This document shows positions 27,852-51,641 of a DNA stretch of 64,000 nt, piece after piece. The notes beneath the pieces were generated by a model that saw nothing but the letters and a program-made list of their open reading frames with translations, was not told the DNA's origin and made no database searches. Made by a program: the position numbers and the translations under genes. Positions within the stretch are counted from its first letter, which is position 1; each line of letters begins with the position of its first letter. The DNA comes from Epithemia pelagica (taxonomy: Eukaryota > Protista > Bacillariophyta): contig OX337242.1 in assembly GCA_946965045.2 (NCBI GenBank), positions 2,356,001 to 2,420,000 of the forward strand, in the 5' to 3' direction.

Positions 27852-28064
27852 GAAGGACTCGACTGGTATCCCGTCGATATCATGCACAGTCATTACACCA
27901 TCATGATCATGTAACTAAAGGGTTAAATTAGTGTCTGCATGTCCTTAAAACCCCTTTCCGTGTCTTGAGATAGATTCGATCTGCGGAAAGTGAAAAAGGG
28001 CACATCTCGAGAAGCACCAACATCCATATGCATACATTTATTCATAGATCACTGTCAAATCATG

Positions 28065-30398: not shown

Positions 30399-31927
30399 AA
30401 AGGGAAACCGCGCGACTCGCACGAAACTACTTCCCGGTCGTACAAAAAATTCCTACTGTAGTATAAAAATGTGAGACGAACTACCTACACAGTCTGGTAT
30501 GGAGTTAGTCTTTAACTCTAACCTTAATCTCATAAAAGGAAACATATCCCCTCGGGAAACGGCCAACCACATCTCGTTCTGCTTCGTTGTCGTCGTCCTT
30601 TCATCCACAACATACAGGGACTCCATCTTCCGAAACACCACCACACCCGCAGGATCATCATCATCATCATGAATTCTGGTTTGCATCTAGGAATTGCACA
30701 ACTGCACCCGAGTGCTGCCTCCTGGAGTACGACGACGCAACCAAGTGGTGGTAATTCAGGAGGAACAGGACCCTGTCATTCTCGTCTCACCTGTGTACAG
30801 CAACATCGGCAGTCCGACTGCCATCCAAGGAGGAGCTCATTGTAGTACTTCTGCCGCAATTGGTTTTGGTCATTGTCGTCGGGCGGTGGAACCATTTCCA
30901 GTTTGACCACTGAACTTTCCACGCCCACCTGTTGCTCTTGGTGGGGTTTGACTGTTGTGTTCATTCCTCGTCCAAACAGTTGATTGTTGCTTTGATTCGT
31001 TGGTTGATTGATCGGTCGGTTTGCTGTGCTGGTGCAGTTGATTGGTGCTTTGAGGCAAGTCTTAATTGCTGTCATTGTCTCGTTTGGTGGTGCGTGTTGC
31101 GTATGCTGCCGTTGTTGCTGCAAACAGTTCATTTGGATTTATCGATGCGTTTGTTTTCGCTGTAAGGCTGTATTGACAGCGGCCGTTGCCGTGGCGGCTT
31201 ATGTTGCGATTCTCCCTCCAAAGTATATAGTATTGTTCTCTTGCGTCAAAGCGAAGCATGGTAAGGCTCAGGAATGAGGTATCGAAAAGATTATGTGTAT
31301 TGTTTCTTCTCCGTCTCACAAGTCCATTTTTTAGAGACATGTTCTCACAGTCCGTTGATCATGCGATACGTAAACCTCAGACGATGATCACATGGCAGTA
31401 ACACGTGGATCGTTCATCAAAGTCCAATCGAAGCACACTGGATACTATCACTCATCGGAAGAGAAACAACTGGGTGGTGGATGCGGTCAGCAAATTGTCA
31501 CCTTTCAAAAGAACCGCTCCGTACCCCACAGGTCAAGAAGGGACCGACGGACGAACGAAGAAGAAGAATGACGTGGCTCCCTACGAGACTTCTCGGGACA
31601 CGTCAGGAAGTTTGGTTGGGTGAAGTTAGAAGATACTTCCCAACCAATATCGAACGAACGATGATTTCATAAGTTGACGAAAAGAAGCAACCTCAACGCA
31701 AGCACGGATCTGATCACCCAGTGTTTCTTTGTGGTTCTCTTTTTTGTTTTCTTTTTTGCTCCCTGTCGATCGTGCCAACCACTCTTACGTTCTGTGTTCT
31801 CTCTTGACACGATGAAGTTTGATTGGGTCGGGACTTCGGAATCCTCGCCCTCTGTGGGGTCGTCAGGTGAGTCTGTTAGTGTTGTACGATTCACGGAAGA
31901 GTAAAGTCAAGGCAGACCGGCGACCCC

Positions 31928-34915
31928 GTGCTCCTTAACCGGAAGATGGACTGGAAAGAGGACAGGCGCAAAGAACACATTCTCCCTAGTGTATTTTCCC
32001 CCACCGGTTTAGTCTCTCGTCGTCTTGGTACGCGGGAGCTCGCGTTGGCGATGGATTTTCCCGCCGAACTGAGCAAGAAAGCGACGGAAGATGAGTTGTC
32101 ATGTTGGATTGACCGTATTGGACCACCGTTCAAGTCTCGAATACAAGTTGCCCATTTGTTGCGTAAATTCCGAGAGGAAGAAGGAAAAACAGAAATGGAT
32201 GTGAAGCAGCCGCCGAGCTTGAAGTTCGAAGTTCCACCAAGTAACGGTGGATTGACGACAGGGCATGGAATGACGGAGGAAGATGGAGAAATTCATTCCC
32301 CTGACGACATGGACCCCTCGTTGATCATCGAATCCAATTTGGAGGAGAGACGAGAAGACCGGAATCTGAAGGCGACCAAAGCAGACGATGCTGCCATACC
32401 GTATCATCTATGGAACGATCGCATTTTGATGCGGTACGATTTCGGCACCGCACTCGAACTCAAGAGGGCAATCGACGCTCTCGATAAGATCCGATGTGGC
32501 GCCCTGCGCTACTGGAAGCGAACTGTCGCCCATGATTTTTGGAGATGGTGGTTGCATCACAAAAGGACCATGGATACAAAATCTCAAGCGGCCTCCATCG
32601 AAGCCGGTCTGTGTGCCCTGCGACACTCGTCCCTCGCTTCATGGTGGGATTGGGATCAGGGATCGTCACCGTTTTTCTGGCGCATGCCGGAGCACAACTG
32701 GATGGTAGAAATGCGTGACGGCGTGAAGCCAATGTGGACGGGTCCTCCACCACGTTACAGAATTCCACAACGACCCAACCCTGACCCAGTGAGTCTCAGT
32801 TTAGAGAAGAAGAAAATTGGGAAAGTCAGAAAACGAGGATATATCGCGCCAAGGCCGGGTATTCTCTCACTCACAAGCTTCTTCTCCGTCCCAAAGGGTG
32901 AGAGCGACATCCGTATGGTTTACGACGGAACCAAGAGTGGACTGAACGGTGTTCTACACGCCCCTTGGTTCGGTCTAGCCACCGTGGAAACAATGCTCCG
33001 GTCAGTTGAGGCCTGTACCTGGTCGGCTGACAACGACTTCGGAGAAATGTTCTTAAATTTCTGGCTTCATCCGGAAATTCGCAAATATACGGGTGTAGAT
33101 CTCACCTCGCTTTTCCCTGAGGAACTCGAAGACGGAAGAAAGACCAAGAAATGGGAAACCTGGGTACGGTGCGCGATGGGAGTTACAGTGTCGCCGTACC
33201 AAACCACCCAATGTTCCCAAAGAGTGAAGAGAATCGTATTCGGTTGTCGGTTTGATGATTCAAACATTTTTCAGTGGGCAGAGGTCCGTCTGAATCTACC
33301 AGGCAATGAAAATTATGATCCATCAAAGCCCTGGATTTCAAAAGTCAGAAAGGACGGAAGAATCGCCGTAGACGTTCACACTTATGTGGACGACCTGCGG
33401 GAGACCGCGCCAACAAAAGAAGAAGCATGGCTTGCTGCAAGTGCCATGGCGAAAGGGTCTGCCTATTTTGGACTCCAGGATGCCGCGAGAAAGAGACGAC
33501 CTCCCAGCAAGACACCAGGCGCTTGGGCAGGCGCAGTTGTTGAAACATGCGAAAATGCCGTTTACAAAACGGTTTCCCAGGAACGATGGGACAAGACAAG
33601 AAAGCACGTTCGCACACTTCAAGGGTGGGCGAACTCTGACGACAAGATCGATCGAAAGGAGTTAGAACGTATTCGTGGATTCTTGGTATACGTCTCTCTT
33701 ACCTTTCATTGCTTGGTTCCATACTTGAAGGGAATCCACTTGACTCTAGAGTCTTGGAGACCCGACCGCGACTCCGAAGGATGGAAACTAAGGGCACGAG
33801 ACCGGGAGGAGGTCCTCCAAGACGAAGAAAAGAAAAGGGTTCTTGAAGGGGGGGCACCTGTCCAGGTTGAAAAGGCTCGAAGATTCAACGATGATATCAA
33901 GGCCATCTCTGCTCTGACAGCATCAGAAAAACCACCCAAGATTTTGGCTCGCCCCAAGCAGGGAGCACAAGCAGTCATTATATTCGGTGATGCATCCGGT
34001 GAAGGGTTCGGATCTTCAATGTGGGTATATGGATCGAACAACATCCATACCGAACACGGACTGTGGACTCGGGAATATGGAGCACGCTCTTCAAATTTTC
34101 GCGAACTCTATAACTTGATTCTGCGGCTCGAGTCGCTCGTGGCATGCGGAAAGATAGAACATGGAACGGAAATTTTTATGTTCACCGATAACTCAACGGC
34201 AGAGTCCGCCTTTTACAGAGGGACGTCGTCTTCGCTGCTGTTGTTCGAGCTCGTTCTGCGTGCAAGAAAACTGGAAATGAGAGGAAGTATATTTATGCGA
34301 GTTGTCTGGGTAGCCGGTACCAGGATGATAGACCAAGGCACCGACGGACTCTCGCGTGGGGATTTAATGACTGGAGTCATGGCCGGAAACTCGATGCTGT
34401 TTTACGTACCGCTAAACAAAACATGCGAAGAGAGACAACCAGGCATTTTAGCTTGGCTTACAACAACATGCGTCGCGAAGGAATGGAAGATTCTTCAGGC
34501 TAGCGATTGGTTTGATAAAGGATTCGAGCGAGGAAACTTTGTTTGGGCACCGCCTCCAGCCGTCGCCGATGTCGTCGTGGACCTGATCTGTGACTCGAAT
34601 CATATTCGCCCCGACAATGCTCACATCTTCGTTTGTCCTGCGCTGATGAGTAATCGCTGGCGAAAAAAGCTCGGCAAGGTGGCCGACTTCGTTTTCACCA
34701 TACCGGTTGATTGTTCATTGTGGAGCAAAGACAAGCATGAACCTCTAATTGCTGCATTTGTTTGCCCTCATCTTTCTTCCAGGCCTTGGCAGGTGTCGCG
34801 AGCGAAACAGTTATTGGATGAAACAAGAGTTGAACTGTCAAAAATGTGGACATCCAATTCCACGCCTGACGGGGGTTGTTTGCGCAAATTATGGCGCTAC
34901 ATGGGAAACAAGTAA
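31928..34915 (+). CDS. RT-RNase H polyprotein of YR element 1 (N-terminally truncated)
   Basis: ADNDFGEMFLNF, MGVTVSPY, YVDDL (RT); FGDASGEGFG, SSNFREL, FTDNST, DGLSRG (RNase H); C-terminal WAPPPA...IFVCP resembles the DIRS methyltransferase-like domain. Confidence 0.9.
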   Translation: MLLNRKMDWKEDRRKEHILPSVFSPTGLVSRRLGTRELALAMDFPAELSKKATEDELSCWIDRIGPPFKSRIQVAHLLRKFREEEGKTEMDVKQPPSLKFEVPPSNGGLTTGHGMTEEDGEIHSPDDMDPSLIIESNLEERREDRNLKATKADDAAIPYHLWNDRILMRYDFGTALELKRAIDALDKIRCGALRYWKRTVAHDFWRWWLHHKRTMDTKSQAASIEAGLCALRHSSLASWWDWDQGSSPFFWRMPEHNWMVEMRDGVKPMWTGPPPRYRIPQRPNPDPVSLSLEKKKIGKVRKRGYIAPRPGILSLTSFFSVPKGESDIRMVYDGTKSGLNGVLHAPWFGLATVETMLRSVEACTWSADNDFGEMFLNFWLHPEIRKYTGVDLTSLFPEELEDGRKTKKWETWVRCAMGVTVSPYQTTQCSQRVKRIVFGCRFDDSNIFQWAEVRLNLPGNENYDPSKPWISKVRKDGRIAVDVHTYVDDLRETAPTKEEAWLAASAMAKGSAYFGLQDAARKRRPPSKTPGAWAGAVVETCENAVYKTVSQERWDKTRKHVRTLQGWANSDDKIDRKELERIRGFLVYVSLTFHCLVPYLKGIHLTLESWRPDRDSEGWKLRARDREEVLQDEEKKRVLEGGAPVQVEKARRFNDDIKAISALTASEKPPKILARPKQGAQAVIIFGDASGEGFGSSMWVYGSNNIHTEHGLWTREYGARSSNFRELYNLILRLESLVACGKIEHGTEIFMFTDNSTAESAFYRGTSSSLLLFELVLRARKLEMRGSIFMRVVWVAGTRMIDQGTDGLSRGDLMTGVMAGNSMLFYVPLNKTCEERQPGILAWLTTTCVAKEWKILQASDWFDKGFERGNFVWAPPPAVADVVVDLICDSNHIRPDNAHIFVCPALMSNRWRKKLGKVADFVFTIPVDCSLWSKDKHEPLIAAFVCPHLSSRPWQVSRAKQLLDETRVELSKMWTSNSTPDGGCLRKLWRYMGNK

Positions 34916-36326
34916 AATGTGTAACGGTGCATGGCATGCAGCTTGTTATCGCCAACACGAGGAGGATCGCTTCCCGGTACTGGAAGCAGGAGACTTGGAC
35001 GACGCGTTGATGGATGGAGACGGACATGGCGAATTAGAGGACGATAAGGAGCGATTCACCGAAGCGAGAGATGGCGACCACTTCATGTGCCCGTTTCAAT
35101 GCGACTCGTGCACCTTTTACAACTTAAAAGGAAGATACAACCGAGTAAACGTTGAACAGGATGATCTTCTGCTTGTCTGCATCCGACGAGCGATTCTTGA
35201 CTCTTTTGGGGCGAGGGAGCGATCAACTGTCGAAAAGAACTGTCGTGAGCTAAGGAATTTGAGCGAAACGGCGAACACTCTGGGTCTGGACGAACCTCTG
35301 CCATCGAGAGGACCTTATCCTTTGGGCGATTCGCAAGGGATCGGAATCGCTTGTCTTATGCTAATGAAAACCTTAAATGCTGGGCGGAACGCAAAGCACA
35401 TACAATTTGAGACAGCGAGAAAGGTTCGATCAGTGGTGTCAAATTTCGTACACATCTTACCAGGTTTCACGGGTTGGTCGACGATGGGAGCGAGTGACAA
35501 ATCATCCTTAACGTTTTCAGCAAGCCCCACAAACAGTCTGTGGTTCAAAAGATACATGTCAGGATGCCACAAACGGATGGGGGACGTCTGGATCCCCGAC
35601 CGAGCGGTCACCTTGGAAGAAGTTCATTGTGGATTGGAAATTCTGGAAGGGGAATGGAGCAGGTTTCCCCAAGGTCAACGCCGTCTCGAGCTGGCTCTAA
35701 CAGGGGCAATGGTTGTCATTGGATTTTGCGCCGCGTTGCGAGGAGAGGAGATTCCGTTGGTGGATGTCGGGCTTGTTCGAAAGTATTGGTTTGAGGGAAT
35801 CCATTATACCAAGGCGCCGCACGTTCCTCTTGCCCTGGCTGGGCGCTTTAAGCAGACTGATGGAACGTTCCGGCTGTATATGCAACCCCTGACTGTGAGA
35901 ACGGACTCCGGCATCGAAGTGCAGAAATGGATTGAGAGATCCATTCGAGAATTGGACGTGAGGAAGATTTCAACAGGCCCGCTATTTCGTCGAACAAGCA
36001 AGAATGGAAAGATCCAAAGAGCCTTGGTAGGAGACCTGGATCATCTGTTCCATAGCTTGTGGAAACGAATCCAACACAAGCGTCCAGACATTATCCCCGA
36101 GAGTATAAAAGTCGAAGAAGAATTCAGCACTCGACGATCTCTTCGAAGAGGGGCGACGACCGTGGCCCAAAATCGTAAGATTGACACAGCTGTCATCGAG
36201 ATGAACAACCGATGGAGAAAGCACATCAAGAGCAGAGGTGTGCTTCCGGGGATGAGTATGCTTGAGCGGTACTCCGACGCCAAAGCTTCCGTGGAAGCGT
36301 TAGTGCAGTTCTCATCGGGTTTGTAA
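34749..36326 (+). CDS. Tyrosine recombinase of YR element 1 (overlaps pol in +1 frame)
   Basis: AALRGEE (catalytic Arg), RRSLRRG (HxxR position), MLERYSD (Tyr); Cys/His-rich N-terminus CQKCGHP...CNGAWHAAC. Confidence 0.85.
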   Translation: MLHLFALIFLPGLGRCRERNSYWMKQELNCQKCGHPIPRLTGVVCANYGATWETSKMCNGAWHAACYRQHEEDRFPVLEAGDLDDALMDGDGHGELEDDKERFTEARDGDHFMCPFQCDSCTFYNLKGRYNRVNVEQDDLLLVCIRRAILDSFGARERSTVEKNCRELRNLSETANTLGLDEPLPSRGPYPLGDSQGIGIACLMLMKTLNAGRNAKHIQFETARKVRSVVSNFVHILPGFTGWSTMGASDKSSLTFSASPTNSLWFKRYMSGCHKRMGDVWIPDRAVTLEEVHCGLEILEGEWSRFPQGQRRLELALTGAMVVIGFCAALRGEEIPLVDVGLVRKYWFEGIHYTKAPHVPLALAGRFKQTDGTFRLYMQPLTVRTDSGIEVQKWIERSIRELDVRKISTGPLFRRTSKNGKIQRALVGDLDHLFHSLWKRIQHKRPDIIPESIKVEEEFSTRRSLRRGATTVAQNRKIDTAVIEMNNRWRKHIKSRGVLPGMSMLERYSDAKASVEALVQFSSGL

Positions 36327-37199
36327 CAAATGAGAGATTACACACCGACGACAACAAAAGATGAGCGACAACAACACGGCGAAGCAGAAGGGATACAAGA
36401 AGGAATACTTGGACTACCGATATGGGGGAATTGGCTCGACAGAACTCTGAGGAGTTAGGTCCAGCTCGTTTGCTGTTGCCAGCTTGCCTGTCGTACTACC
36501 CAGCTGATTATCTCTCAAACGTTGACCTAGGCTTGGCAGCCCATGGAATATACGGCAAAGCACTTGTGATGATATTTCGAGGTGTCTTTGGCCCCTTACT
36601 GGGGTTTGAACATGGGATGGATGCTCGGTGGGAGGCACACTCGCACGTAACAGACAGATGCTTTCACGGGGTCCGAGTCCCGCGACATCTGGAACGAATC
36701 ACGATTCCCACCCACCCTGGGGAAGGGGGGTGGAGGGCCTAGCCCCCCCAGAGTATTGGTATGTCTAAATAGTGTACATGTTTATGCAATAGTGAGTGAG
36801 GAAGAACAGGATGGAAAAAGGATGGTTGGGAAAACGTCCATTGTGATGAAGAGTGAGGAACTAGTACCGTGGCACTCAGGCTACCTTTACCACTCATCGT
36901 CCTACCCTTCCCCACTCACTGAGCACTCACTGAGGAGTAAGTCACTCCCCACGCTCCCACTACCTAAGCCCCAAAAATTACTGTACTTAGATGTTTTATT
37001 CTAGTGTAGTGTAGGAGTTCCCATTGTGTTGGTGCATGCTGCTGTGTTCTGTGTTGTCTTGTGTCGTTCGTGGTCGGGTCGCGAGAGGAGAAGGGGATGG
37101 AAGATCTAAGTATTCTATCACACTATTTATGCGCCTCGGAGTTTGATTGGCATGCAATAATTGTGAGAAAAATGATACTCAGACATAAAGCGTTTTAAA

Positions 37200-37305
37200 T
37201 CATCCGATATAATCGGATGAGGTCACTTAAGTGACGCGGTTATTTTGAAACAATTAAGATTTACTACTGCCATATCGAAAGTAGGGCATGCTTAATTGTT
37301 TAAAA
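37200..37305. repeat. Cluster of short palindromes/hairpins
   Basis: TCATCCGAT-ATA-ATCGGATGA; GTCACTTAAGTGAC; TTTTGAAACAATTAAG ... CTTAATTGTTTAAAA. Confidence 0.9.
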
Positions 37306-37416
37306 CTAATTAGGCTCACGACTACCAAGTATCCATTCAGAGAACCGATCACTTAGGAAGACCGAAAATTACCTAGGGTGCGCTGGCACGACTCCTCGTG
37401 ACAAAGGAGGCAAACA

Positions 37417-37628
37417 TACTTTAATAGCCCCGGAGGACTCCTCGTCGCAGGGCGCTCCTCGTGGCTTAACTCCTCGTCGGGCAATAGCTTCTCGTCGTGG
37501 ACTGCCCCCTCGATCCGCTTAAGCGGATCTCACAGGGGCAGTCCACTCCTCGTCGCTATTGCCCTTCTCGGAGTTTAGCCACTCCTCACACCCTAGCTCC
37601 TCCTCGTCCACCCTCAGCTATTAAAGTA
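37417..37628. repeat. 212-nt rod-like foldback with repeated CTCCTCGT internal loops
   Basis: Nested stems 37417-28/37617-28, 37479-88/37555-64, 37499-508/37535-44, plus central 18-bp palindrome 37512-29; CTCCTCGT or variants lie between the stems on both arms. Confidence 0.9.
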
Positions 37629-38090
37629 GACTTACCACCATGTGGGTAGTAAGAGCAGCGAATCATAGCAATGAAACATGAAAACCCGTAGAAACCTGCA
37701 CATCCATGGGGTCAAGAGTCTATGCCGAAGCAGCAAGAGGTTTCAGGCGACGGGCAAGGTGATGACCGTGATTGGATTGTGCGCTGCATTGCACCCAATG
37801 CCAAGTATTGGAAGCAGGATGAGTCATTCCATTTGTTTCACTGGGACACGTCCAAATTCTGGGGTACAGCGAAGACTCTCGAATTTACCCAACACGGTGA
37901 CTCAGGGGGTGCGTCGTAAACGTTATTGCCTATTTCAGACCAACAAGATGATTGTCTACCTACTCGCTTCATGGGGCGCGAGGGAAGTATCCTAGTTCTC
38001 ATGCGATGGATGTAGGTTTTATTGATTATTCAGGCAACAAACTAATTCTGCTTTTCTGTTTTGAACCTCAACTTGTATAGTCCCTCTTCC

Positions 38091-38898
38091 TTACGTTGTT
38101 ATGAAATCAGAACCTCTAAATAAACATCTGTTGACCATCGTAAAGGTAAAAACTCGCTGCGCAAAGACAGTCGACAAGGATGGGTCCATGGGCGCCAGCG
38201 GAACTATGCCTTCCACTTGGAAGTGCAGAATCGCAAAGTCCCGGCACCCTATGTCGAAGCGCCTACAAGCCGGGTCGCCATAGAATCGGGTAATGTGCTC
38301 CTCCAGCTCCGTAATGTCAGTTTTTGTGTGGCCCTTTGTACGAACACACTCAACGTAGGAATCCACCGTTGAGTTCAAGTACAAATCCGGGCGGCGACCA
38401 GCGGTCCGTGCAGCAATTAGTTTTGGATTGAAGAGCTTGGTTGTTAGCTGACTTACTCGATGGAGTAGCAACAACAGTTCGAAAGTCAGTGCGTCTTCTA
38501 CGGCGCCACCGTGGTCGTCATAGTGTTCCCAGTGTAACTTTGGAAGAGCAAAGCAAAGCACCTGCCGCACACCCTCGACACCATGAGCGAGTTTTTCTCC
38601 GTAACGGGGGCCTGTAGCGGCCATCGATTCCGTGAACAAGTCGAAGAGCAAATGCGACACAATTCTTCCCTCAGCGTCGCAGAAGCCTTTCTTCAATAGA
38701 AACTCCATCAACATAGGTTCTTATGAGCGTACAACAGGGGGCGTAAATCTGTGGGAGGGGGCGGTGATATACGGTTCTTCATATCCATAAAATCGAGCGA
38801 TTGTCGAAATGGGCCCGAATGTAACGATGCAAATGCCTCCTTTGCCGTCTTGTTTTGCTCTTTGACGAGCGGCACCAGGAGCTCAGACAGCCGCATCA
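38091..38898 (-). pseudogene. Crinkler-like REase gene, 3' part (frameshift near 38710; interrupted by Copia)
   Basis: GRRPDLYLN...SYVECVRTK resembles a PD-(D/E)XK motif. Removing the Copia and one TSD copy restores the frame GGHIYPVMRLSELL. Confidence 0.6.
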
Positions 38899-39010
38899 AA
38901 TTACGATCGTGCGTCTAAGTGAAAAACTGAAATAGTGAGCTCTAAGCTACGCGTCCCTCATGGGTTAGCTACTCGCCCAAAATTCGCTTAATATCAGTCG
39001 CCTTTCTTGG
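38899..39010 (-). repeat. 3' LTR
   Basis: Identical to 45071-45182; preceded on the minus strand by the purine tract GAGGGGA (PPT). Confidence 0.95.
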
Positions 39011-39213
39011 TCCCCTCAAAATTGCTATGACGGACCCTCTTGATATAGTCACATTTTGCCATCTTCATACTCTATAACACATGGAATTCATCAACATTCA
39101 TCTTCTTCATTTCCTCCACACCTGCTTTAGAGCGCCCCACCTTTTATGGCGTGCAGGACGTACCCAGTCCCCTCAGTCGGGCGGGAAACGTACTCATTGT
39201 CCAATGGCTTTCC

Positions 39214-42200
39214 TCAGAATAAAATCATCTGTGCCAGTCTTGTCCGCTCCGGACCAGTTTGAATCTTCGTAAGCAGGTCCGCTAAATTTGTCTTAGACGG
39301 TTCAAAAGCAATCTTGCATGTACCGTTTGCCACGTTTTCGCGTACAAAATGATACGCAACTGAATTCGATTTCTTGCGTAGTGTCGATTCCGGTAAGGAA
39401 CTGTTGTAGACCACAGACATATTGTCTACACGCACATGTGCATGTCCGTCCAATGGAATTCCCATCATCCTCATCTTGTATCGTAAGCCTTTCAGCATCT
39501 CCACCCCCACCTTGAGGGCCATAAATTCAGACCCAAACGTAGAAGTCTCAACGCTCGTTTGTTTCTTGCTATACCACGAGATGGGGGCTCGATTCAAGTA
39601 AATGAGCACACCTGTTCTGGAGCGTCGCGTCAAGAGATCTCCAGCATGGTCTGAATCGACGAAGACTGTCATTTGGACCGCTTTGCCTAATGGTTCGGGT
39701 GCATCTGGAGGAATTTCTTCAATGGCTCCAGGATAGAAACCTGTCCAGTCACTCGTTGGTTCATCACCAAGCTCAATATATGATGGATCCATGATGAGCC
39801 GTGAACGATCGTGTAGGTTGAGATAAGCAAACAGATGAAGCATTGCCTCCACATGCCCCTCTCTGGGCCCTGCCAAAAATCCAGCCAACATTGATACTTC
39901 TGCAGCGATGTCAATTCTTCCCAATTCGACAAGCCAGCGAAGCACACCCATTTGCTGTTGATAAAAGTTCATTAGCTGTGGATCACAATATGGTGTTGTG
40001 TCCAATTCAGGACGATACCCACTGGGCAACACACTTGGTGCTCTGGTTTTGAGTTTGCGGTCTTGATTTTCAAGCCATGAGACTACGTTCCGTATGGCTG
40101 CCTTTGCATATTTCTCTGAACTCAACGCCCAGCATCGTTGAGACACGTCATTATTGATATCGAACGTTTGTACTTGTGATCCCAGATAATATTTTGGAAT
40201 ACCAATCGAATCTGGTTTAAGTAGGTAGTGGTGGTCAAGCATTGTCAAAGATTCCATCGGCTTGTGCGAGATGACCAATATGTCGTCTGTATAGACGAAC
40301 AGCATTTCGTAGTAGCGTTCTCCATTTCCCTTTGTAGCTTGACGTAAATAACAGTCTGGATCTGCTCGACATGGGAAATAGCCCAAGTCCTCTTGCAGGG
40401 TAGTGGACAGGAGATCGCGCCAGGCATAAGCACTGGTCTTTAACCCATACAGGGCTTTTGTGATGATCGCAATCCGGCCTTGGTACTCGGTGCCAAATTC
40501 TAAACCGCATCTTGTACAGACCTTTTCAAGGCATGGAGCGTTCAGATAAGCTCCGGCAATATCAGCTGCTTGAATCTCTAATCCATTGAGAGCGGCCAGC
40601 ATGAATCCAATTCGGACACTCTCACGACTGACGACACTTGCGTATGTTGGTGCTTCGGGCTCTTCCGTCCTATGGCCTCCAGCCACATATCTGGCTTTTC
40701 GGGTGAAATCCATCTTGACATCAAAAACGATGTGACAAGGGATTACCTGATAGCCCACTGGTTCTTTGACACCGTCGTCCAGGATTTTGACGGCTGGAAA
40801 AATCTTGGACATCTCCAGTTTCAGGGCTTTACGCCAATAATCCGTACCAGTTTCACGATCAATCTGGAGAGCTCGTTCCACTGTTTTGGGCACCTCAATG
40901 CCGTATTTTTGAGATTGCCGCATGTACCTTGTAGTCTTTGCTGCTTTGATCAGCCTCGTTCTTCTTCGTAGAGTGAATGGGACCCACCATGCAAACGCGG
41001 GTTCTTTCTCTAGTTTGTTCGCAACAGCATACTCAGCGACTTCGATAGGATAGGATTCTTTGAGGTCCTTTAGGGCCTCCCAACTTGAGGAACCGTCCTT
41101 CCATTTAATACATAAGAACCAGCCTCTCGTCGTTTTCTTCTTGTGTTTTCGTCCATTCAATTCGAATTCGCCATCCGATATGGGCACAGCTGTCTTGTCA
41201 GCTTTGTGATCGGTGATTTCCTCCACCATACGATACAAATTGCCCTCATCATCGAGTTGCTCGTAAATATTTTCGGCAATAAGATTTGCCGCATATGACT
41301 GTACATGCCCATCGTCGAATTCAACTTCATAGAGGGTCGTATCCAGATAGGGATTCGTTGAGGCATGTCCGACGACCCGACCCTCTGCGTCTCGTTTCCT
41401 TCTTCTAACCGTCCCCTTTCGTTGATCGTCGCCAAGAGGCAGCATAACTTTAGCAGAAATGAGTTTATCGTATGCATCGGGTGCATAGGCATCGGCTTCT
41501 GGCATCCGAACATCTGGTTGTTCGTCATCTTCGTAGGCCTCAAAAGTAGGCGTGTCAGCCTCATTATCATCTTCATCAGCAATGGGGATACCGGCCATTC
41601 TATTCCCAAGGGCAGCTTTCAGGTTTTCCATATATAAAGCCTGCTGAGCTTTGTGTGCGTCATCCATTTGTGATTCTCGGTGGATTGGCCATACGGAGGT
41701 TCGATGAACTATCTTTCCTTTGTCAGTTAAGACTTTGGCGCACATTGCCTGACCGACGGTATGACTTGGTCCCAGCCAGCGGCCCAATTTGCGACCCTCA
41801 AAGCCAGGGTTACTATACCAAACAAAATCGAACCATCGATGTTCAACGAGGTGGGAAATATCTGGCGTATCGCCAGTGAGTTGTTGAATGGGCGGCCCAT
41901 TCACATTGCTTCCAAAACTCGTGTGGGAGCGTCGTTCCGCCATTAGCATGAGACAATGGTCCCACAATACAGCTGGTGCGTTACTACGCCTCATTTCTCG
42001 TCGGTAGAGGCGCTTCAATTCTCTGATATTGGCCTCAGCCAGGTTTTGGTTTGGAGTCCAGGCTTCCACAGGTTTAATGCGGCATCCGTATTTGTGAGCT
42101 ACCTTCCGAAATTCTTGCGAGGTTAATTCTGGCGCGTTGTCAGGGATGATATGATTGAAAATGCCGTAACTGTCGAAGACAGATGGTAACGTTGTCGGAG

Positions 42201-43194
42201 CGTCGCTTTTCTTTCGCATAGGGACGAAATGGACCCAGCCAAAGTCGGTGGCAAAAATCTGCCCGCATGTATGTTGATCCAGTGATTTCGTCTCAGAAAA
42301 CAGTGTATCGGTGTACACATCTGCTCTCAGTCGGCGATGCCGCAGTTGGTATGCCGTGTGTTTCAAACGGCGACTCCCTCCTTGATCAGTAAACTCTCGG
42401 ACACCCAACTGTGTCGTCTGCTGGAATGTCCGCTCAGCGCTAGGAAGTCCAATACTCCATCGTTGTGCCAATTCATCTGGACGTATTGTCCCCTTTCGCC
42501 TATGTCCAATATCTGATACGTGGACATGAATGGCGCGATTATTCACTCGTAGTGTCTTTGTCATTGCAAGGTTGATCGTCCGCTCACGCTTTTCTTCTGA
42601 GGCGTTCACTTGTACTGAATCCCGGAGTGCCCTTTCATCAACGTCAGGTGTTGAGTCATTCGGCTGCCATTCGGGTCTTTCATTTGTCATGTCGATTCGG
42701 CAAGAAGGATCTATTGTTTCAATCTCTTCTTTCGTGGGCTTGCGCGTACAGAATTGGCTTAGAACGCCAACAAGATCGAGTGGAATGCGCAATTCGCCCA
42801 GTTCGTTGTCCCTTGCAATGATACTGTGGGATCGTTGGGTTCGGTCCCCTGCTTTCAAGTATTTCAACGGCACATCGTTGACTTCAATACCGGCCTCCCT
42901 CATTTGATTCGGATTAAGGAGGCATTTGTCTTTTAATTGTGGTAGATGTAGAGCTTGATGAAAATAAAGAAGGAACGTTTGGCCTGTTTCCTGGTCGTCA
43001 TATGCCAATACACCAGTAATTACACCGGCCTCTTTAATCTTGCCAAGACTCTCAACAAAACCACTGACATCAGCCGTATCTGTTTGATACAGAACATAGC
43101 ATTCAGATCCCAGACAGCATGTATCCGCATGACTGTCGAGCTCACACCTGATTAGGGGAACTGAGATCTCACGAGAAGTTGTCGCAGACATCAC
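39214..43194 (-). CDS. Copia pol (protease, integrase, RT, RNase H)
   Basis: ELDSHADT (protease); TDTLF...PDNAPE...AEANIRELK (integrase DDE); HIVFDVK...RKARYVAGGH, ADIAGAYLNA, KALYGLK, VYTDD (RT); VDSDHAGD, SEFMALK, VDNMSV (RNase H). Confidence 0.95.
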   Translation of the reverse strand: MMSATTSREISVPLIRCELDSHADTCCLGSECYVLYQTDTADVSGFVESLGKIKEAGVITGVLAYDDQETGQTFLLYFHQALHLPQLKDKCLLNPNQMREAGIEVNDVPLKYLKAGDRTQRSHSIIARDNELGELRIPLDLVGVLSQFCTRKPTKEEIETIDPSCRIDMTNERPEWQPNDSTPDVDERALRDSVQVNASEEKRERTINLAMTKTLRVNNRAIHVHVSDIGHRRKGTIRPDELAQRWSIGLPSAERTFQQTTQLGVREFTDQGGSRRLKHTAYQLRHRRLRADVYTDTLFSETKSLDQHTCGQIFATDFGWVHFVPMRKKSDAPTTLPSVFDSYGIFNHIIPDNAPELTSQEFRKVAHKYGCRIKPVEAWTPNQNLAEANIRELKRLYRREMRRSNAPAVLWDHCLMLMAERRSHTSFGSNVNGPPIQQLTGDTPDISHLVEHRWFDFVWYSNPGFEGRKLGRWLGPSHTVGQAMCAKVLTDKGKIVHRTSVWPIHRESQMDDAHKAQQALYMENLKAALGNRMAGIPIADEDDNEADTPTFEAYEDDEQPDVRMPEADAYAPDAYDKLISAKVMLPLGDDQRKGTVRRRKRDAEGRVVGHASTNPYLDTTLYEVEFDDGHVQSYAANLIAENIYEQLDDEGNLYRMVEEITDHKADKTAVPISDGEFELNGRKHKKKTTRGWFLCIKWKDGSSSWEALKDLKESYPIEVAEYAVANKLEKEPAFAWWVPFTLRRRTRLIKAAKTTRYMRQSQKYGIEVPKTVERALQIDRETGTDYWRKALKLEMSKIFPAVKILDDGVKEPVGYQVIPCHIVFDVKMDFTRKARYVAGGHRTEEPEAPTYASVVSRESVRIGFMLAALNGLEIQAADIAGAYLNAPCLEKVCTRCGLEFGTEYQGRIAIITKALYGLKTSAYAWRDLLSTTLQEDLGYFPCRADPDCYLRQATKGNGERYYEMLFVYTDDILVISHKPMESLTMLDHHYLLKPDSIGIPKYYLGSQVQTFDINNDVSQRCWALSSEKYAKAAIRNVVSWLENQDRKLKTRAPSVLPSGYRPELDTTPYCDPQLMNFYQQQMGVLRWLVELGRIDIAAEVSMLAGFLAGPREGHVEAMLHLFAYLNLHDRSRLIMDPSYIELGDEPTSDWTGFYPGAIEEIPPDAPEPLGKAVQMTVFVDSDHAGDLLTRRSRTGVLIYLNRAPISWYSKKQTSVETSTFGSEFMALKVGVEMLKGLRYKMRMMGIPLDGHAHVRVDNMSVVYNSSLPESTLRKKSNSVAYHFVRENVANGTCKIAFEPSKTNLADLLTKIQTGPERTRLAQMILF

Positions 43195-43200
43195 ACTGTG

Positions 43201-44628
43201 TCAAACGCTTCTCCTTTTACGTTGGCTCATGATAGCGCCGACACCCTTTGTGTCGTTATCGTGGCTCTCAGACGATTCATCCGTAATGTCGGGTGTTTCG
43301 TCTCCATCATTTTGACGAGGCTTCTTGTTGGGCTTGCTGGAAATAGCCCCAACTCCTCTTCGTTTATCACGCTTTTCTCTGGCGTCGCGTACTCGTTGAC
43401 GTTCCTCGCCACTGAGCTTAGCCCATTCGTTGGGTTTATAATAGCGGTCTGTTATTTCTTTCTCTTTCTTGTTTTCATTTTTCTTATTATTCTTTCCACC
43501 ACCTTTGTTGGGCGTGGAAGTAGATACACCAGAGATTCTTGCTTGTTTCCGACTTGCTGCGCTATAGGAAACCTTGCTATCAAGGACTTCCGCAAGGAAA
43601 TTTGACGCATTCTCAAAGGTAGAGCGCAGAAATGGTGTTGCCAGGATTTGATTCTTGGCACTCTCAAGGCGAGAGTCAGAAGTTCCTGTCATCAGGATTC
43701 TCACCTTTCGCTCTTCGCTTACGGTCTCTCCTGTTGATTCGAGATCCGTAAATGCTCGTTGGAGAGTTTCGATGTAACGCTCGTACGTGTAGTTACGCTT
43801 GGACCCGTCATAATAGGTGCTCTCAAGGATTTGATCAGCCTTAGCCCGAAGACGTGACTGAAAGGCATCACCGAGATAGTGGGATTTGAGAGCTAAATAA
43901 GCGGCTCGTCCATTGCGGGTGCGTGCAAAAGACATCACCCAACCCCAGCCAGGGCCATCATGTGTAACATGGCGGATCGTCTCCCATACAGCAACCATGT
44001 CCGTTGTAGCTGTTGGGCCTTCATGTGAAGCTCGACGAATCATCTCGGAGAGAATAGTTGGTGTTCCAAAGCCATTCGGATCAGTTGCTTCTGGTTCGAC
44101 AACAGGATTTGCTCGTACATATGCGGCAAGTGGAATGCCACTCACTCCACGTTTGCGTTCGAAGTAATTGTCCAAATCCTCTAGGACAACTCGAATATTG
44201 TCTACACTGGTGAGTTTCCCAGGTAGTTCGACATCATTATCGTATTCGTCTTCAGCTTCCTTGAATCGATAGAGTAGAGTCAGGTCATTCATCGTTGGCG
44301 GAACCGCAGCGAAGGTGCGGTTTATTTTCCCGATATGCACGATATAATAACGAAGCATCTTCAGTTTCTTCTCGACCAGGTGTCCAATGAGCACTCCTGG
44401 ATTAGCAATCATTGCTGGCACACCAGCTGGATCTGGGTTCGGGATGAGGCCACCTGGTTTACGGGCATTGGTACAAATTTCAGCGACATCTGCTTCGCTA
44501 AGAGCCTCAAAATCATAGGCGGAGGTTAGACCTTGCCCGTTGATTGCAGTACGAACTGCTGGATCAGTAATCCCCAATACAACGTCCATGTAGACGTTGA
44601 GCAGTTGCATAGGATTGGCGGCTGCCAT
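43201..44628 (-). CDS. Copia gag
   Basis: 475-aa ORF directly upstream of pol in the same frame; helical capsid-like core and basic C-terminus. Confidence 0.8.
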   Translation of the reverse strand: MAAANPMQLLNVYMDVVLGITDPAVRTAINGQGLTSAYDFEALSEADVAEICTNARKPGGLIPNPDPAGVPAMIANPGVLIGHLVEKKLKMLRYYIVHIGKINRTFAAVPPTMNDLTLLYRFKEAEDEYDNDVELPGKLTSVDNIRVVLEDLDNYFERKRGVSGIPLAAYVRANPVVEPEATDPNGFGTPTILSEMIRRASHEGPTATTDMVAVWETIRHVTHDGPGWGWVMSFARTRNGRAAYLALKSHYLGDAFQSRLRAKADQILESTYYDGSKRNYTYERYIETLQRAFTDLESTGETVSEERKVRILMTGTSDSRLESAKNQILATPFLRSTFENASNFLAEVLDSKVSYSAASRKQARISGVSTSTPNKGGGKNNKKNENKKEKEITDRYYKPNEWAKLSGEERQRVRDAREKRDKRRGVGAISSKPNKKPRQNDGDETPDITDESSESHDNDTKGVGAIMSQRKRRSV

Positions 44629-45053
44629 GGTTGCGAGGATTCTTTGTCTTTTTCGGACTCGTTCAGACTTTCCAGCGAAGTGAGGTTTTCTTCTTCTTTG
44701 GGGAATTTACACGTCATGGTCTCAGTTCTACTTGCGAGCGTGCGGTAGAATCGGAGTTGGAGAGCTTGCATGGTGTGCTAGGACGGCGCACGTCATTTAA
44801 GTAATGAACATGTCCGTATAGCTTCATCCCCAACGGCAGGATGTTCGGCGCGTCCGCCATTGCCCGGTGTGTGCGCATACGCGGACCACACACCACATTC
44901 ATCCATCTCGAGCCCCGTTGCAGGCGAGATATTAGTGAGATGAACGGGAGTACAGGTGTCCAACCTTGGGCAGTCATTCTTCCAAGCGAATGATCTAGAT
45001 ATTTCGCGACCTTCCCAGGCCATGGTGGGTATAGCATCTCATTAGTTATTGCA

Positions 45054-45070
45054 TTGGGTCTGATAAACCA
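45054..45070 (-). promoter_or_regulatory. Putative primer-binding site
   Basis: TGGTTTATCAGACCCAA begins immediately after the 5' LTR; the TGG start fits a tRNA CCA end. Confidence 0.65.
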
Positions 45071-45182
45071 AATTACGATCGTGCGTCTAAGTGAAAAACT
45101 GAAATAGTGAGCTCTAAGCTACGCGTCCCTCATGGGTTAGCTACTCGCCCAAAATTCGCTTAATATCAGTCGCCTTTCTTGG
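45071..45182 (-). repeat. 5' LTR
   Basis: Identical to 38899-39010. Confidence 0.95.
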
Positions 45183-45372: not shown

Positions 45373-46499
45373 ACGCTGCGAGTGTACAGGTGCTCACCAC
45401 AACCGCGAATGATACTGCTTTGAAAGCACTGTTGAATGCTGCCAAGGTACCAGAACTCCAAAGTTTGGCGCTCCCTTCATTGCACCGAATTGTCCGGAGA
45501 AAAGCTCCAAAGCACAAGAGCAAAATGCTTGTGCTTCTTTCCAATGACTCTCTGATGAGGCCCGGTGGATCCGACAGAGACATGGATGGATCTCGCAGCA
45601 TTACAGAAGTTCAAACGGCCCGACTCGTGGAATCTCTCTGCCGATCCACTTCAGTGAATGAACCGTGTCACTCAAATCTAATGGATGCTCTGACCTCCAT
45701 GTCACTTTCGTCTTCTGCCGCTGTTCGGTATTGGGCGGCCAAGGCCTTTCAAGGTCAGGCCATTGACAAACTCAACTAATTCTTCCTCGCGCGGACACCG
45801 GCCATGCTCCGATCAATTGTGATGCTGGTAAAAGACCCTGTGGGACGCGTACGTGAGAAAGCGACATTGGTTGTCTCGCAATTGGCTTCGCAACGAATGA
45901 ATGCCAAATTGCTGAGATATAATTACCAGCTCTTGGAAGCTCTCTTGCTCAATGCACGTATTCGCTGCACCAGCAGCAAACGTCCGTCCCCCATGTCCAA
46001 GACCAGTACACCTCCCACAGTGGCAGCGCGTCTCTCTGTGCAAGGTATCTTAACATTGGCTAGCCAAGAACCGTCACGAGAGCGCATTGCCAAGTATAAG
46101 AATTGCGTGGCGACACTTGCTGCTTATGGTGTCTCGCAAGATGGCGATGTGGAGCTCCGAAAGGCCGCCTTGCATGGTGTGATTATGCTTGCACACCTCT
46201 TGTAACATGATTTGACAGTGATCTAAGAATAAATGTATGCATATGGATGTTGGTGCTTCTCGAGATGTGCCCTTGTTCTCTTTCCGGAGATCGAATCTAT
46301 CTCATGACACGGAAAGGGGTTTTAGGCACATGCAGACACTAATTTGACCCTTTAGTTACATGATCATGATGGTATAACGTCTGTGCATGATATCGAAGGG
46401 ATACCAGTAGTGTCGTTCCAAAACTCGCCGGATAACTTTACTCGGCGACGTCGTCCCTTGTAGATATACAAAGTCCCTGTCAAAAACTTTACCTTGGTC
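45373..46499 (+). pseudogene. Inverted partial duplicate of 27770-28897 (3' half of the ARM gene, intergenic DNA, 3' end of the Tudor-like gene)
   Basis: Near-identical translation; CAA to TAA nonsense change at 45777-45779; no 5' half. Confidence 0.9.
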
Positions 46500-46676
46500 C
46501 TATTTCATACCAACAAGATGATTTCCACCGGTCTACCTACTCGCTTAACGGGCGCAGAGGAAGTATTCTAGTTCTCGTGCAATGGATGTAGGTTTTATTG
46601 ATTATTGTGGCCTGTTTTACCGTGTTCTCGATTTGATGGTATGTTTTCTTCGTGATGTATTTTATCCGCTGGTCCT

Positions 46677-47849: not shown

Positions 47850-48137
47850 GCATGTAAGTTGGGGAAATCATCTGGCGCCAAATTGATCTGTCCTGTATGG
47901 GCGGTGGTGCTTCAGCTGTTGGTTGCTGTAGTCGTGTGTGTGTGTGCGCGCCATGGTTCATGGTTGGTGGGCATGGAGTGAACAGCCGAGTTCGGCTACG
48001 GGGGGTCCGCGCTTTTCGCCAATTCCACGCACTGACAGCGTCCGTGGGGTAAGAATCACATTGGCAGAATGTCCGTTCATGGCCCAATTTACTGTAGCAA
48101 ACAGTCTACATTCCACATGTGTACACATAAACCAATC

Positions 48138-51638: not shown

Positions 51639-51641
51639 CAG

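What the first reader, a model, noticed from the sequence alone, without database searches (positions are those of the whole stretch)
37392..37628. 212-nt rod in which variable complementary stems alternate with one constant loop motif
Seen: six exact CTCCTCGT copies (37392, 37438, 37455, 37470, 37546, 37600) and three variants (37488, 37564, 37582), all on the same strand. The spacers between them are unique, yet each spacer in the second half is the reverse complement of its mirror spacer in the first half (TACTTTAATAGC, GCAGGG, GGCTTAACT, GGGCAATAGC, GGACTGCCCC), around the palindrome GATCCGCTTAAGCGGATC. Simple inversion would have flipped the motif and simple tandem duplication would not give complementary spacers, so the pattern implies selection on a single-stranded fold. 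Inference: an ssDNA or RNA scaffold presenting a ladder of near-identical internal loops (GACGAGGAGU on the minus strand) as multivalent protein-binding sites, for example a packaging, replication or transposition signal of an undescribed element or ncRNA.
Basis: partly seen in the sequence, partly recalled or inferred. Interest (0 to 1): 0.8.

Follow-up and report, generated by a model that had tools for sequence, protein, structure and literature searches.

The report
Purine-zippered rod ending a mobile insertion
The 212-nt hairpin rod is real and forms one end of a 755-bp insertion without genes that a second copy of the same diatom locus lacks; on one strand its "constant loops" pair with each other through G·A pairs and the fold brings the insertion's two ends together, which is unusual but so far rests on a single copy.

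Summary
In detail: the motif copies, the mirror-complementary spacers and the central palindrome are all at the stated positions, and the fold is far beyond chance (z -9.7 and -11.7).

The window is eukaryotic, probably from a diatom. A second copy of the locus in the same assembly (L125) is an empty site. It shows that the rod is not part of the neighbouring DIRS/PAT-like tyrosine-recombinase retroelement X (31517-36869). The rod is the last 212 nt of a separate 755-bp insertion without ORFs, Y (36881-37635), 11 bp from X.

On the minus strand the "loops" are symmetric purine blocks that face each other as G·A pairs. This explains why the motif sits on the same strand in both arms. That strand folds 29 kcal/mol better as RNA and has 7 G·U pairs against 0.

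In a unit-length minus-strand RNA, Y's first and last bases pair with adjacent bases of a 17-nt segment beside the rod's base (0 of 351 random controls). This resembles the internal complementary region of DIRS elements. Y also begins with a splice-donor-like hexamer and ends in AG.

No relative of Y was found, so covariation, expression and protein binding remain untested. Verdict: a new variant of a terminal cis-acting fold of a mobile element; interest 0.6.

The parts
36881..37635 (-). Y: a 755-bp insertion without ORFs that carries the rod. It is absent from the second copy of the locus (L125), which has a single base at this place.
   Evidence: BLAST and alignment of the window against L125. 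No Pfam hit or word-search hit for its stop-free frames. No copy elsewhere in the window or in about 150 kb more of the same assembly.
37417..37628 (-). The rod: Watson-Crick stems of 6-12 bp alternating with symmetric purine blocks (minus strand), or with pyrimidine mismatches (plus strand).
37512..37529 (.). Perfect 18-nt palindrome at the tip of the rod (7-bp stem, 4-nt loop).
   Evidence: (I4).
37398..37414 (-). Internal 17-nt segment (the splint) complementary to both ends of Y. In the unit-length minus-strand RNA fold, 37410 pairs with Y's first base and 37409 with its last base.
   Evidence: random controls 0 of 351.
37631..37635 (-). The 5' end of Y on the minus strand. It pairs with the splint (5 bp, 2 of them G·U) and is part of a splice-donor-like hexamer at 37630-37635.
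   Evidence: pair probabilities 0.84-0.96; sequence.
36881..36893 (-). The 3' end of Y on the minus strand. It pairs with the splint (12 bp with one bulge) and ends in AG.
   Evidence: pair probabilities 0.55-0.92; sequence.
37387..37400 (-). Small hairpin that holds the seventh full motif copy: a 5-bp stem with a 4-nt purine loop on the minus strand. It overlaps the splint by 3 nt, so the two are alternative pairings.
37200..37309 (-). Three further hairpins inside Y (37200-37220, 37222-37235, 37240-37309).
   Evidence: (I3, I5).
36870..36880 (.). 11 bp of host DNA separating X from Y. It is identical to L125 9903-9913.
31517..36869 (+). X: a DIRS-order (PAT/Ngaro-like) tyrosine-recombinase retroelement, absent from L125, in the form A-internal-B without the second A-B repeat. 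It is a neighbour of the rod and does not carry it.
   Evidence: Empty site; family ends; ORFs below.
31928..34915 (+). X ORF of 995 aa, putative reverse transcriptase/RNase H.
   Evidence: Weak RVT_1 match (E 0.018, residues 356-437). YVDD and DAS motifs read by eye. No PDB sequence hit.
34749..36326 (+). X ORF of 525 aa (gene as called in the database: 469 aa), a tyrosine recombinase.
   Evidence: AlphaFold model (pLDDT 73). Foldseek top hits are all tyrosine recombinases: Cre E 3.8e-4 with probability 1.0, then XerH, phage integrases, lambda Int and Flp. 276 relatives, the named ones from a diatom.
38898..45182 (-). Ty1/copia retrotransposon, also absent from L125. A neighbour only.
   Evidence: RVT_2 hit; 114-nt ends 100% identical; 5-bp overlap at the empty site.

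Best explanation
The rod is the terminal cis-acting fold of Y, a small mobile insertion without genes (36881-37635). It works in single-stranded form on the purine-rich (minus) strand, most probably as RNA.

On that strand, Watson-Crick stems alternate with blocks in which the constant motif faces a second copy of itself and pairs through tandem G·A pairs, with some G·G. Both arms must therefore carry the purine motif on the same strand. The result is a nearly continuous helix of about 105 steps. It is stable on one strand only, and at the DNA level the longest matching stretch of the two arms (48 nt) is only 77% complementary.

Directly beside the rod's base lies a 17-nt segment complementary to both ends of Y. 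In a unit-length molecule the first and last bases lie side by side on this splint as a nick, stacked on the rod. I read the rod plus splint as a device that holds and presents the two ends of the element for joining or recognition (circle formation or a recombination junction). This is the logic of the internal complementary region of DIRS retroelements and of viroid-like rods. The repeated two-fold-symmetric purine blocks are probable protein-binding sites.

Shown: the fold, its strand asymmetry, its terminal position, the insertion polymorphism and the end-to-end geometry. Inferred: that the molecule is RNA, that the ends are joined, and that a protein binds.
For: 1. The rod is real and extreme.
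2. Strand asymmetry. As RNA the MFE is -150.2 (minus) against -120.9 (plus). The minus strand has 83 canonical pairs including 7 G·U; the plus strand has 73 with 0 G·U. On the minus strand 12 of 15 internal loops are symmetric. Of 28 facing positions 19 are G·A or A·G, 3 are G·G and 3 are A·A. A plain foldback in the same genome (L125 6984-7206) folds equally well on both strands, -144.1 and -143.4.
3. L125 is an empty site. X ends at 36869 with the conserved end of its family, 11 bp of host DNA follow, and then Y runs to 37635. The rod's basal pairing reaches Y's last base.
4. In the unit-length minus-strand RNA fold, base 1 pairs with 37410 and base 755 with 37409, with pair probabilities of 0.55-0.96. 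Y's borders were fixed beforehand from the empty site. All four mismatches between the splint and the reverse complement of the two ends are transitions that give G·U on the minus strand, read by eye from the sequence and consistent with the four G·U pairs listed. An exact nick appeared in 0 of 351 random 755-nt segments of the same genome.
5. Y has no ORF match, no terminal inverted repeat, no clear target duplication and no poly-A. This fits elements that insert by recombination rather than by cut-and-paste or target-primed routes.
6. Tyrosine-recombinase retroelements are numerous in this genome, and one sits 11 bp away. According to PMC7192593, DIRS-1 needs its internal complementary region and passes through single-stranded intermediates.
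Against: Only one copy of Y is known, so there is no covariation test, no family and no defined partner element.

The end-to-end pairing appears only with the RNA energy model and only for an isolated unit-length molecule. With DNA parameters it is not in the MFE. In a read-through transcript with flanks, both ends pair with flanking sequence instead (probability of the key pairs at most 0.007). The 5'-end helix has only 5 bp, 2 of them G·U.

The part of Y outside the rod has no significant similarity to the A or B regions of the neighbouring retroelement family. Their shared motif near the B end occurs in one family member only.

Nothing shows transcription or protein binding. A much shorter hairpin would suffice to hold the splint, so the ladder itself is still explained only by inference.
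Confidence: 0.4

Rival explanations
1. Y is an intron-generating transposable element (an introner) or a recent spliceosomal intron on the minus strand. The rod compacts the intron and the splint brings the two splice sites together.
For: On the minus strand Y starts with a perfect splice-donor-like hexamer (37630-37635) and ends in AG (36881-36882), read with borders taken from the empty site. This is the same strand the fold evidence favours as RNA. Y lies about 455 nt downstream of the stop of a minus-strand STAND-NTPase ORF, in the sense orientation, so it may be in that gene's 3' UTR. Introners occur in diatoms and other ochrophytes and come from many kinds of transposon, some with unknown mechanism (PMC12130899). 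Introns whose ends are joined by RNA structure are described in Amoebophrya (PMC7789003) and in euglenids (PMC3935182 and PMC4770533, abstracts).
Against: No ORF spans the insertion site on the minus strand. The last 60 nt are purine-rich with many internal AG dinucleotides, no pyrimidine tract, and only a distant branch-like site. The donor would be buried in a helix. With flanks included, the clamp is not predicted. At 755 nt it would be a very long intron for a diatom (own knowledge). Splicing does not explain the motif ladder. Only one copy is known.
Confidence: 0.25
2. One reading: an RNA or ssDNA scaffold that displays a ladder of identical open internal loops as multivalent protein-binding sites, for example a packaging signal.
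For: Nine motif copies on one strand and an extreme fold. Purine-rich internal loops are classic protein-binding sites in RNA (own knowledge).
Against: The loops are symmetric and their facing bases are almost all purine-purine in the tandem G·A arrangement, so they are probably closed rather than open. No protein partner and no relatives are known. This model does not use the terminal position or the splint.
Confidence: 0.12
3. A folded single-stranded DNA recombination site for a tyrosine recombinase, with the crossover at the base of the hairpin, as in integron attC sites or the attP hairpin of a filamentous phage. Y would be a non-autonomous passenger of the DIRS-like elements.
For: The hairpin sits exactly at one end of the insertion, with no target duplication and no terminal inverted repeats. 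A tyrosine-recombinase element lies 11 bp away. DIRS intermediates are single-stranded cDNA, and integration leaves the same short sequence at both junctions (PMC7192593). The ends of X show a shared ACCG at both junctions.
Against: With DNA parameters the strand asymmetry nearly vanishes (-66.8 against -62.8) and the ends do not pair with the splint. Y's junctions share no unambiguous trinucleotide. Y has no similarity to the neighbouring family. The likeness of the joined ends of Y to the circle junction of X was noticed after the fact.
Confidence: 0.1
4. A hairpin-RNA locus that yields small RNAs, or an ordinary foldback or MITE.
For: It is a long inverted repeat in a transposon-rich region. 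Plain foldbacks do exist in this genome (L125 6984-7206; L246 20800-21380).
Against: The longest uninterrupted Watson-Crick run is about 12-13 bp, too short for a Dicer-type duplex. The motif is not flipped between the arms. Y as a whole has no terminal inverted repeats or target duplication, and no second copy was found.
Confidence: 0.05
5. Double-stranded DNA function: iteron-like direct repeats of an 8-bp protein site, with the cruciform potential incidental. Alternatively, a neutral by-product with no function.
For: The motifs are direct repeats at 15-18-bp spacing (D1).
Against: Neither version explains four or five perfectly mirror-complementary spacers, the one-sided G·U pairs, or the symmetric purine blocks. 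An inverted duplication would have flipped the motif.
Confidence: 0.05

Closest known systems
Internal complementary region (ICR) of DIRS-1-type tyrosine-recombinase retroelements
   Same: An internal segment complementary to both ends of the element aligns the ends of a single-stranded unit-length intermediate so that a circle junction can form. Insertion leaves no target duplication of the usual kind (PMC7192593). Y has such a segment beside the rod, and a DIRS-order element lies 11 bp away.
   Different: Y has no ORFs, no inverted terminal repeats and no similarity to the neighbouring family. Its splint is only 17 nt. The pairing is predicted with RNA energies but not with DNA energies. No rod with repeated purine blocks is mentioned for DIRS elements in the paper I read (PMC7192593), and none is known to me.
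Viroid-like and retrozyme circular RNAs
   Same: Non-coding molecules of 600-1000 nt with rod-like self-complementary folds in which the two ends of the linear monomer lie in a helix (PMC5680766 and PMC4918200, abstracts; the position of the ends is own knowledge).
   Different: No hammerhead or other self-cleaving ribozyme was found in or around Y (Rfam). Y has no flanking direct repeats. There is no evidence of a circular RNA.
Introners and structured non-conventional introns (Amoebophrya, euglenids, ochrophyte introners)
   Same: Mobile insertions with splice-site-like borders whose RNA structure brings the two ends together. Y has a donor-like start and ends in AG on the strand that folds best.
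   Different: In those introns the two ends pair with each other, and many have terminal inverted repeats and target duplications. Y's ends pair with a third, internal segment. Y is not inside a recognisable exon.
Folded single-strand recombination sites of bacterial tyrosine recombinases (integron attC; the attP hairpin of a filamentous phage)
   Same: A strand-specific imperfect hairpin lies at one end of the inserted unit, with the crossover at its base. The integron integrase appears among the fold matches of X's recombinase (rank 43).
   Different: Those sites are bacterial, 60-150 nt long and recognised through a few flipped-out bases. They have no ladder of purine blocks. The comparison rests on recalled knowledge and geometry only.
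Tandem G·A mismatch motifs in structured RNA and purine-rich satellite DNA
   Same: The 5'-GA-3' over 3'-AG-5' arrangement closed by C-G pairs is a well-known stable non-canonical helix element and a frequent protein-binding site (own knowledge). The blocks here have exactly this arrangement.
   Different: To my knowledge no family has been described with about ten such symmetric blocks spaced regularly along one 212-nt hairpin. No Rfam family matches.

Membership tests
Any Rfam 15 RNA family | Match at or above the family's gathering score | tested here: not met
   0 matches in the whole window. In 36300-38800 at E up to 10 there were only two weak matches, both outside the rod.
DIRS-order retroelement (does the rod belong to X?) | The rod lies inside the element's borders | tested here: not met
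   X ends at 36869 with the conserved family end. 11 bp identical to the empty site follow before Y starts.
DIRS-order retroelement (identity of X itself) | Tyrosine recombinase gene | tested here: met
   Foldseek top hits are Cre, XerH, phage integrases and Flp, probability up to 1.0. Pfam and PDB sequence searches were blank.
DIRS-order retroelement (identity of X itself) | Reverse transcriptase/RNase H gene | tested here: inconclusive
   RVT_1 at E 0.018, below the cut-off, in 2 of 4 family members. The YVDD motif was read by eye.
DIRS-order retroelement (identity of X itself) | Split direct repeats A1-internal-B1-A2-B2 (PAT/Ngaro type) | tested here: met
   Present in the window's second family copy (element 2) and in L003 and L004; in L005 the second B end lies far downstream. 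X and the L002 copy have the A-internal-B form only.
Non-autonomous DIRS-type element (Y) | Internal region complementary to both ends | tested here: inconclusive
   Met with RNA energies for the unit-length molecule (0 of 351 controls). Not in the MFE with DNA energies or with flanks included.
Non-autonomous DIRS-type element (Y) | Sequence similarity of its ends to an autonomous partner | tested here: not met
   The highest of 22 pairwise z-scores is 3.3, and that score lies below the best shuffle.
MITE / foldback / TIR DNA transposon | Terminal inverted repeats at both ends plus a target-site duplication | tested here: not met
   The ends of Y read are not inverted copies of each other, and the junctions show no duplication.
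Helitron | 5'-TC and 3'-CTRR ends, insertion between A and T, hairpin close to the 3' end | tested here: not met
   Neither strand of Y has these ends, and the host junction is not A|T. Only the hairpin near one end resembles a Helitron.
Spliceosomal intron / introner | GT...AG borders | tested here: met
   Minus strand: donor-like hexamer at 37630-37635 and AG at 36881-36882.
Spliceosomal intron / introner | Lies within a transcribed gene and is removed from its RNA; many copies in genes | not testable with these tools
   No transcript data are available. The site is 455 nt 3' of an ORF stop, and no ORF spans it. The genome cannot be searched by DNA.
Retrozyme / viroid-like circular RNA | Self-cleaving ribozyme | tested here: not met
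   No ribozyme family at E up to 10.
Hairpin small-RNA precursor | Long, nearly perfect duplex | tested here: not met
   Watson-Crick runs of at most about 12-13 bp, interrupted by 15 internal loops.

The most novel reading that the evidence does not exclude
Y represents an undescribed class of small non-coding mobile element in diatoms. It would propagate through a unit-length single-stranded RNA, possibly released precisely by its own intron-like borders. Its ends would be aligned for closure by a strand-specific, G·A-zippered rod plus an internal splint, and its repeated symmetric purine blocks would recruit the proteins of a resident retroelement. That would link intron-generating elements, circular RNAs and tyrosine-recombinase retroelements in one mechanism.
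Probability: 0.12. Interest if true: 0.85.

Novelty: new variant of a known kind. Interest (0 to 1): 0.6.

Why it matters
Terminal structured signals are how non-autonomous mobile elements are recognised, yet this architecture matches no Rfam family and nothing in the papers I searched. Ordinary stems alternate regularly with self-pairing purine blocks, so the helix is stable on one strand only, and a splint beside it aligns the element's own ends.

If further copies confirm it, three things would follow:
- It would give a sequence-level handle on how ORF-less elements spread in diatom genomes.
- It would offer a natural example of strand discrimination by G·A pairing.
- It might bridge intron-like borders and circle-forming retroelements.

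It also gives a practical lesson. A "constant loop motif on the same strand in both arms" can be the signature of purine-purine pairing rather than of open loops.

Tried and rejected
Searches and tests that gave nothing:
1. Rfam on the window and, permissively, on the region: nothing.
2. tRNA scan of the window: none.
3. Pattern scan for three motif copies at variable spacing. After folding and screening, all were coding or simple tandem repeats with no rod. The tip palindrome had 0 hits in IMG/VR. I did not scan the prokaryote genome collection, because the same pattern would only return the same coding repeats.
4. Word searches with two stop-free translations of Y found no candidate. Pfam on seven frames found nothing. 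These are poor proxies for a DNA search, and the diatom assembly itself cannot be searched by DNA with these tools.
5. About 150 kb more of the same assembly, fetched through relatives of the recombinase: no copy of Y, no motif cluster, no similar rod.

Ideas rejected:
6. "The rod is the 3' part of the DIRS-like element": rejected by the empty site and the family ends.
7. "An inversion with breakpoints at 27770 and 37929": dropped, because L125 has the same gene order and the pattern is an old partial duplication.
8. [quoted passage not shown]: it occurs in one member only.
9. "The B region of X has a comparable structure": z is +0.59.
10. Helitron, MITE, solo LTR, SINE/LINE tail, organelle fragment and sequencing-adapter artefact: the ends, composition and imperfect arms do not fit.

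I did not use the large representative protein search. A translation of non-coding DNA would not have tested the absence of relatives.

Full report
OBSERVATION

CTCCTCGT occurs exactly at 37392, 37438, 37455, 37470, 37546 and 37600 on the + strand, with one-to-two-base variants at 37488, 37564 and 37582. The window holds 14 exact copies on both strands against 1.75 expected. The spacers of the second half are the reverse complements of their mirror partners, around the perfect 18-nt palindrome at 37512-37529.

Folding 37380-37650 gives z-scores of -9.7 (+ strand) and -11.7 (- strand) against dinucleotide shuffles. It is the strongest local inverted repeat in the window. Tandem Repeats Finder does not report it as a tandem repeat. 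The copy at 37392 lies outside the rod, in a small hairpin of its own.

WHAT THE "LOOPS" ARE

I laid the rod out as two strands. On the minus strand nearly every interruption is symmetric: 12 of 15 internal loops. The facing bases are almost all purines: of 28 positions, 19 are G·A or A·G, 3 are G·G and 3 are A·A. The arrangement is 5'-GA-3' over 3'-AG-5' closed by C-G pairs. From established knowledge, this is the classic stable tandem G·A motif.

A purine block can pair in this way only with another purine block. The rod is therefore a nearly continuous helix of about 105 steps, not a string of open loops.

The minus strand is the better candidate for the folded strand:
- RNA MFE is -150.2 against -120.9 kcal/mol.
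- It has 83 canonical pairs including 7 G·U, against 73 with 0 G·U on the plus strand.
- A plain foldback from the same genome, taken as a control, folds equally well on both strands, -144.1 and -143.4.
- With DNA parameters the asymmetry nearly disappears, -66.8 against -62.8. The evidence therefore leans towards RNA.

CONTEXT

The window is eukaryotic. It has a Ty1/copia element (RVT_2 hit) and no tRNA genes.

Upstream of the rod on the + strand lie a 995-aa ORF and a 525-aa ORF with no Pfam or PDB sequence match.
- The 525-aa protein has 276 relatives in public data. The only named ones are from the diatom Epithemia clementina.
- An AlphaFold model built on 22 relatives (pLDDT 73) matches only tyrosine recombinases in the PDB. 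Cre is the top hit (E 3.8e-4, probability 1.0), followed by XerH, phage integrases, lambda Int and Flp.
- The 995-aa protein has a weak RVT_1 match (E 0.018) and a YVDD motif read by eye.

Paralogues in the window (element 2) and in other contigs of the same assembly carry split direct repeats A1-internal-B1-A2-B2. This is a DIRS-order, PAT/Ngaro-like retroelement family. I call the copy next to the rod X.

State of these elements:
- X has one large internal deletion compared with full-length relatives: the first ORF and the start of the second are missing. It also lacks the second A-B repeat. Its remaining two reading frames are open.
- In element 2 the second ORF is in two pieces (one break, type not determined).
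- The copia element's two long ORFs are open.

THE DECISIVE COMPARISON

A cluster look-up of two small ORFs flanking the rod led to a second copy of the locus in the same assembly: L125, contig ctg1301l, 93-99% identical to the window. This copy lacks X, lacks the rod region and lacks the copia element.

The junctions read as follows:
- X occupies 31517-36869. It ends with the conserved end of its family and has the same four bases at both junctions.
- 11 bp identical to the empty site follow (36870-36880).
- A separate 755-bp insertion, Y (36881-37635), replaces a single base of L125.

The rod is therefore not part of the recombinase element. It is the last 212 nt of Y, and on the minus strand its basal pairing reaches Y's very last base.

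Y has:
- no ORF with any match;
- no terminal inverted repeats, no clear target duplication and no poly-A;
- no significant similarity to the A or B regions of the neighbouring family;
- no second copy in the window or in about 150 kb more of the same genome.

THE ENDS MEET

I folded Y alone as minus-strand RNA. Its first base (37635) pairs with 37410 and its last base (36881) pairs with 37409. The two ends lie side by side as a nick on a 17-nt internal segment (37398-37414) directly beside the rod's base. The 5'-end helix has 5 bp and the 3'-end helix has 12 bp, with pair probabilities of 0.55-0.96.

Y's borders had been fixed beforehand from the empty site. The splint is an imperfect reverse-complement copy of the two ends. 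Reading the sequences by eye, all four mismatches are transitions that give G·U on the minus strand. Among 351 random 755-nt segments of the same genome, none showed an exact nick and only 16 had both ends paired.

There are limits. The pairing is not in the MFE with DNA parameters or on the plus strand. When flanks are included, both ends pair with flanking sequence instead. It is therefore a property of a free unit-length molecule and not of a read-through transcript.

INTERPRETATION

The best-supported reading is that the rod plus splint is a terminal cis-acting fold of a small non-autonomous mobile insertion. It acts on the purine strand, probably as RNA, and holds the element's ends together for closure or recognition. 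This is the logic of the internal complementary region of DIRS-1, which is essential for that element and acts on single-stranded intermediates (PMC7192593). It is also the logic of viroid-like rods. The repeated, two-fold-symmetric purine blocks are plausible protein-binding sites. That step is inference.

The strongest rival is an intron-like element.
- For it: on the minus strand Y starts with a perfect splice-donor-like hexamer and ends in AG. It lies in the sense orientation about 455 nt downstream of a STAND-NTPase ORF. Introners occur in diatoms and their relatives (PMC12130899). Introns whose ends are joined by structure are known (PMC7789003; euglenid abstracts).
- Against it: the 3' end is purine-rich with many competing AG dinucleotides. 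No ORF spans the site. The donor would be buried in a helix. With flanks included, the clamp is not predicted.

The two readings could be combined, as described under the novel case.

Small-RNA hairpin, double-stranded DNA iteron and neutral-origin models do not account for the un-flipped motif, the one-sided G·U pairs or the terminal geometry.

RELATIVES

None were found. Pattern scans of JGI metagenome contigs and of IMG/VR returned only coding or simple tandem repeats. The diatom assembly cannot be searched by DNA with the tools at hand.

STEPS LEFT OUT AND A SLIP

I did not build a sequence with Y's two ends joined, nor an allele with X cut out and the flanks closed. I could not tell whether these count as reconstituting or repairing a virus-like element. 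The linear folds and separate pieces were used instead.

VERDICT

This is a real and statistically extreme structure. It is best classed as a new variant of a known kind, the terminal structured signal of a mobile element, with two unusual features: regular G·A-zippered blocks that make the helix strand-specific, and an adjacent splint that aligns the element's ends. Interest is 0.6. Confidence in the mechanism is moderate to low because there is only one copy and no expression data.

Noticed in passing
window 2697-8085 and 10680-16068: A 5389-bp inverted duplication, 100% identical. Each arm carries ORFs of 400 aa (two Myb DNA-binding domains), 158 aa and 606 aa. The 2.6-kb centre has its own 516-nt inverted repeats (8123-8638 / 9593-10108, 99%), 300-nt direct repeats, and an ORF (8928-10088) with a weak GIY-YIG match.
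   Followed up: partly
window 38898-45182: A Ty1/copia retrotransposon on the minus strand with 100% identical 114-nt ends and a 5-bp overlap at the empty site. It is absent from L125, so it is a very recent insertion. It interrupts the region upstream of a STAND-NTPase-like ORF.
   Followed up: partly
window 31513-31516, 36866-36869 and L125 9890-9916: The target of X resembles X's own circle junction. Six of the seven bases before the crossover match, and a 7-mer about 15 nt inside the A repeat recurs in the host just after the crossover. The right flank of element 2 shows a similar likeness to its A start. This suggests att-like target choice by the recombinase.
   Followed up: partly
window 37631-37653: The host flank 9 nt beyond Y contains a near copy (one base missing) of the reverse complement of Y's joined ends. 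Since the insertion, a 9-bp hairpin spans the Y/host border. The same host sequence is present in the empty site.
   Followed up: partly
window 48147-57210: A second copy of the DIRS-like family (element 2, 65-70% identical to X). It has complete split direct repeats: A at 48130-48351 and 56553-56774 (99%), and B repeated at a spacing of 647 nt (100%).
   Followed up: partly
window 27770-28897 versus 45373-46499, and 37929-38030 versus 46499-46606: An old partial duplication of the 3' part of a HEAT-repeat gene, in inverted orientation (97%), joined to a copy of a segment downstream of Y (84%).
   Followed up: partly
L125 4812-8664: L125 carries its own 3.85-kb insertion that the window lacks. 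It holds a DDE_Tnp_4 (PIF/Harbinger-type) transposase fragment and a plain foldback with 109-nt arms at 6984-7206 (z -18.9) that folds equally well on both strands.
   Followed up: partly
L246 20800-21380: A cluster of four adjacent plain hairpins with arms of 33-70 nt, sharing a flipped 15-nt motif. Probably another foldback repeat family of this genome.
   Followed up: no
window 36913-36934: Two tandem copies of an 11-nt unit inside Y. On the minus strand each contains a splice-donor-like hexamer.
   Followed up: no
window 31812-31876 and 48419-48483: Both DIRS-like copies begin their coding region with an ATG-led 55-nt segment that ends in a canonical splice-donor sequence. These elements may contain an intron.
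   Followed up: no
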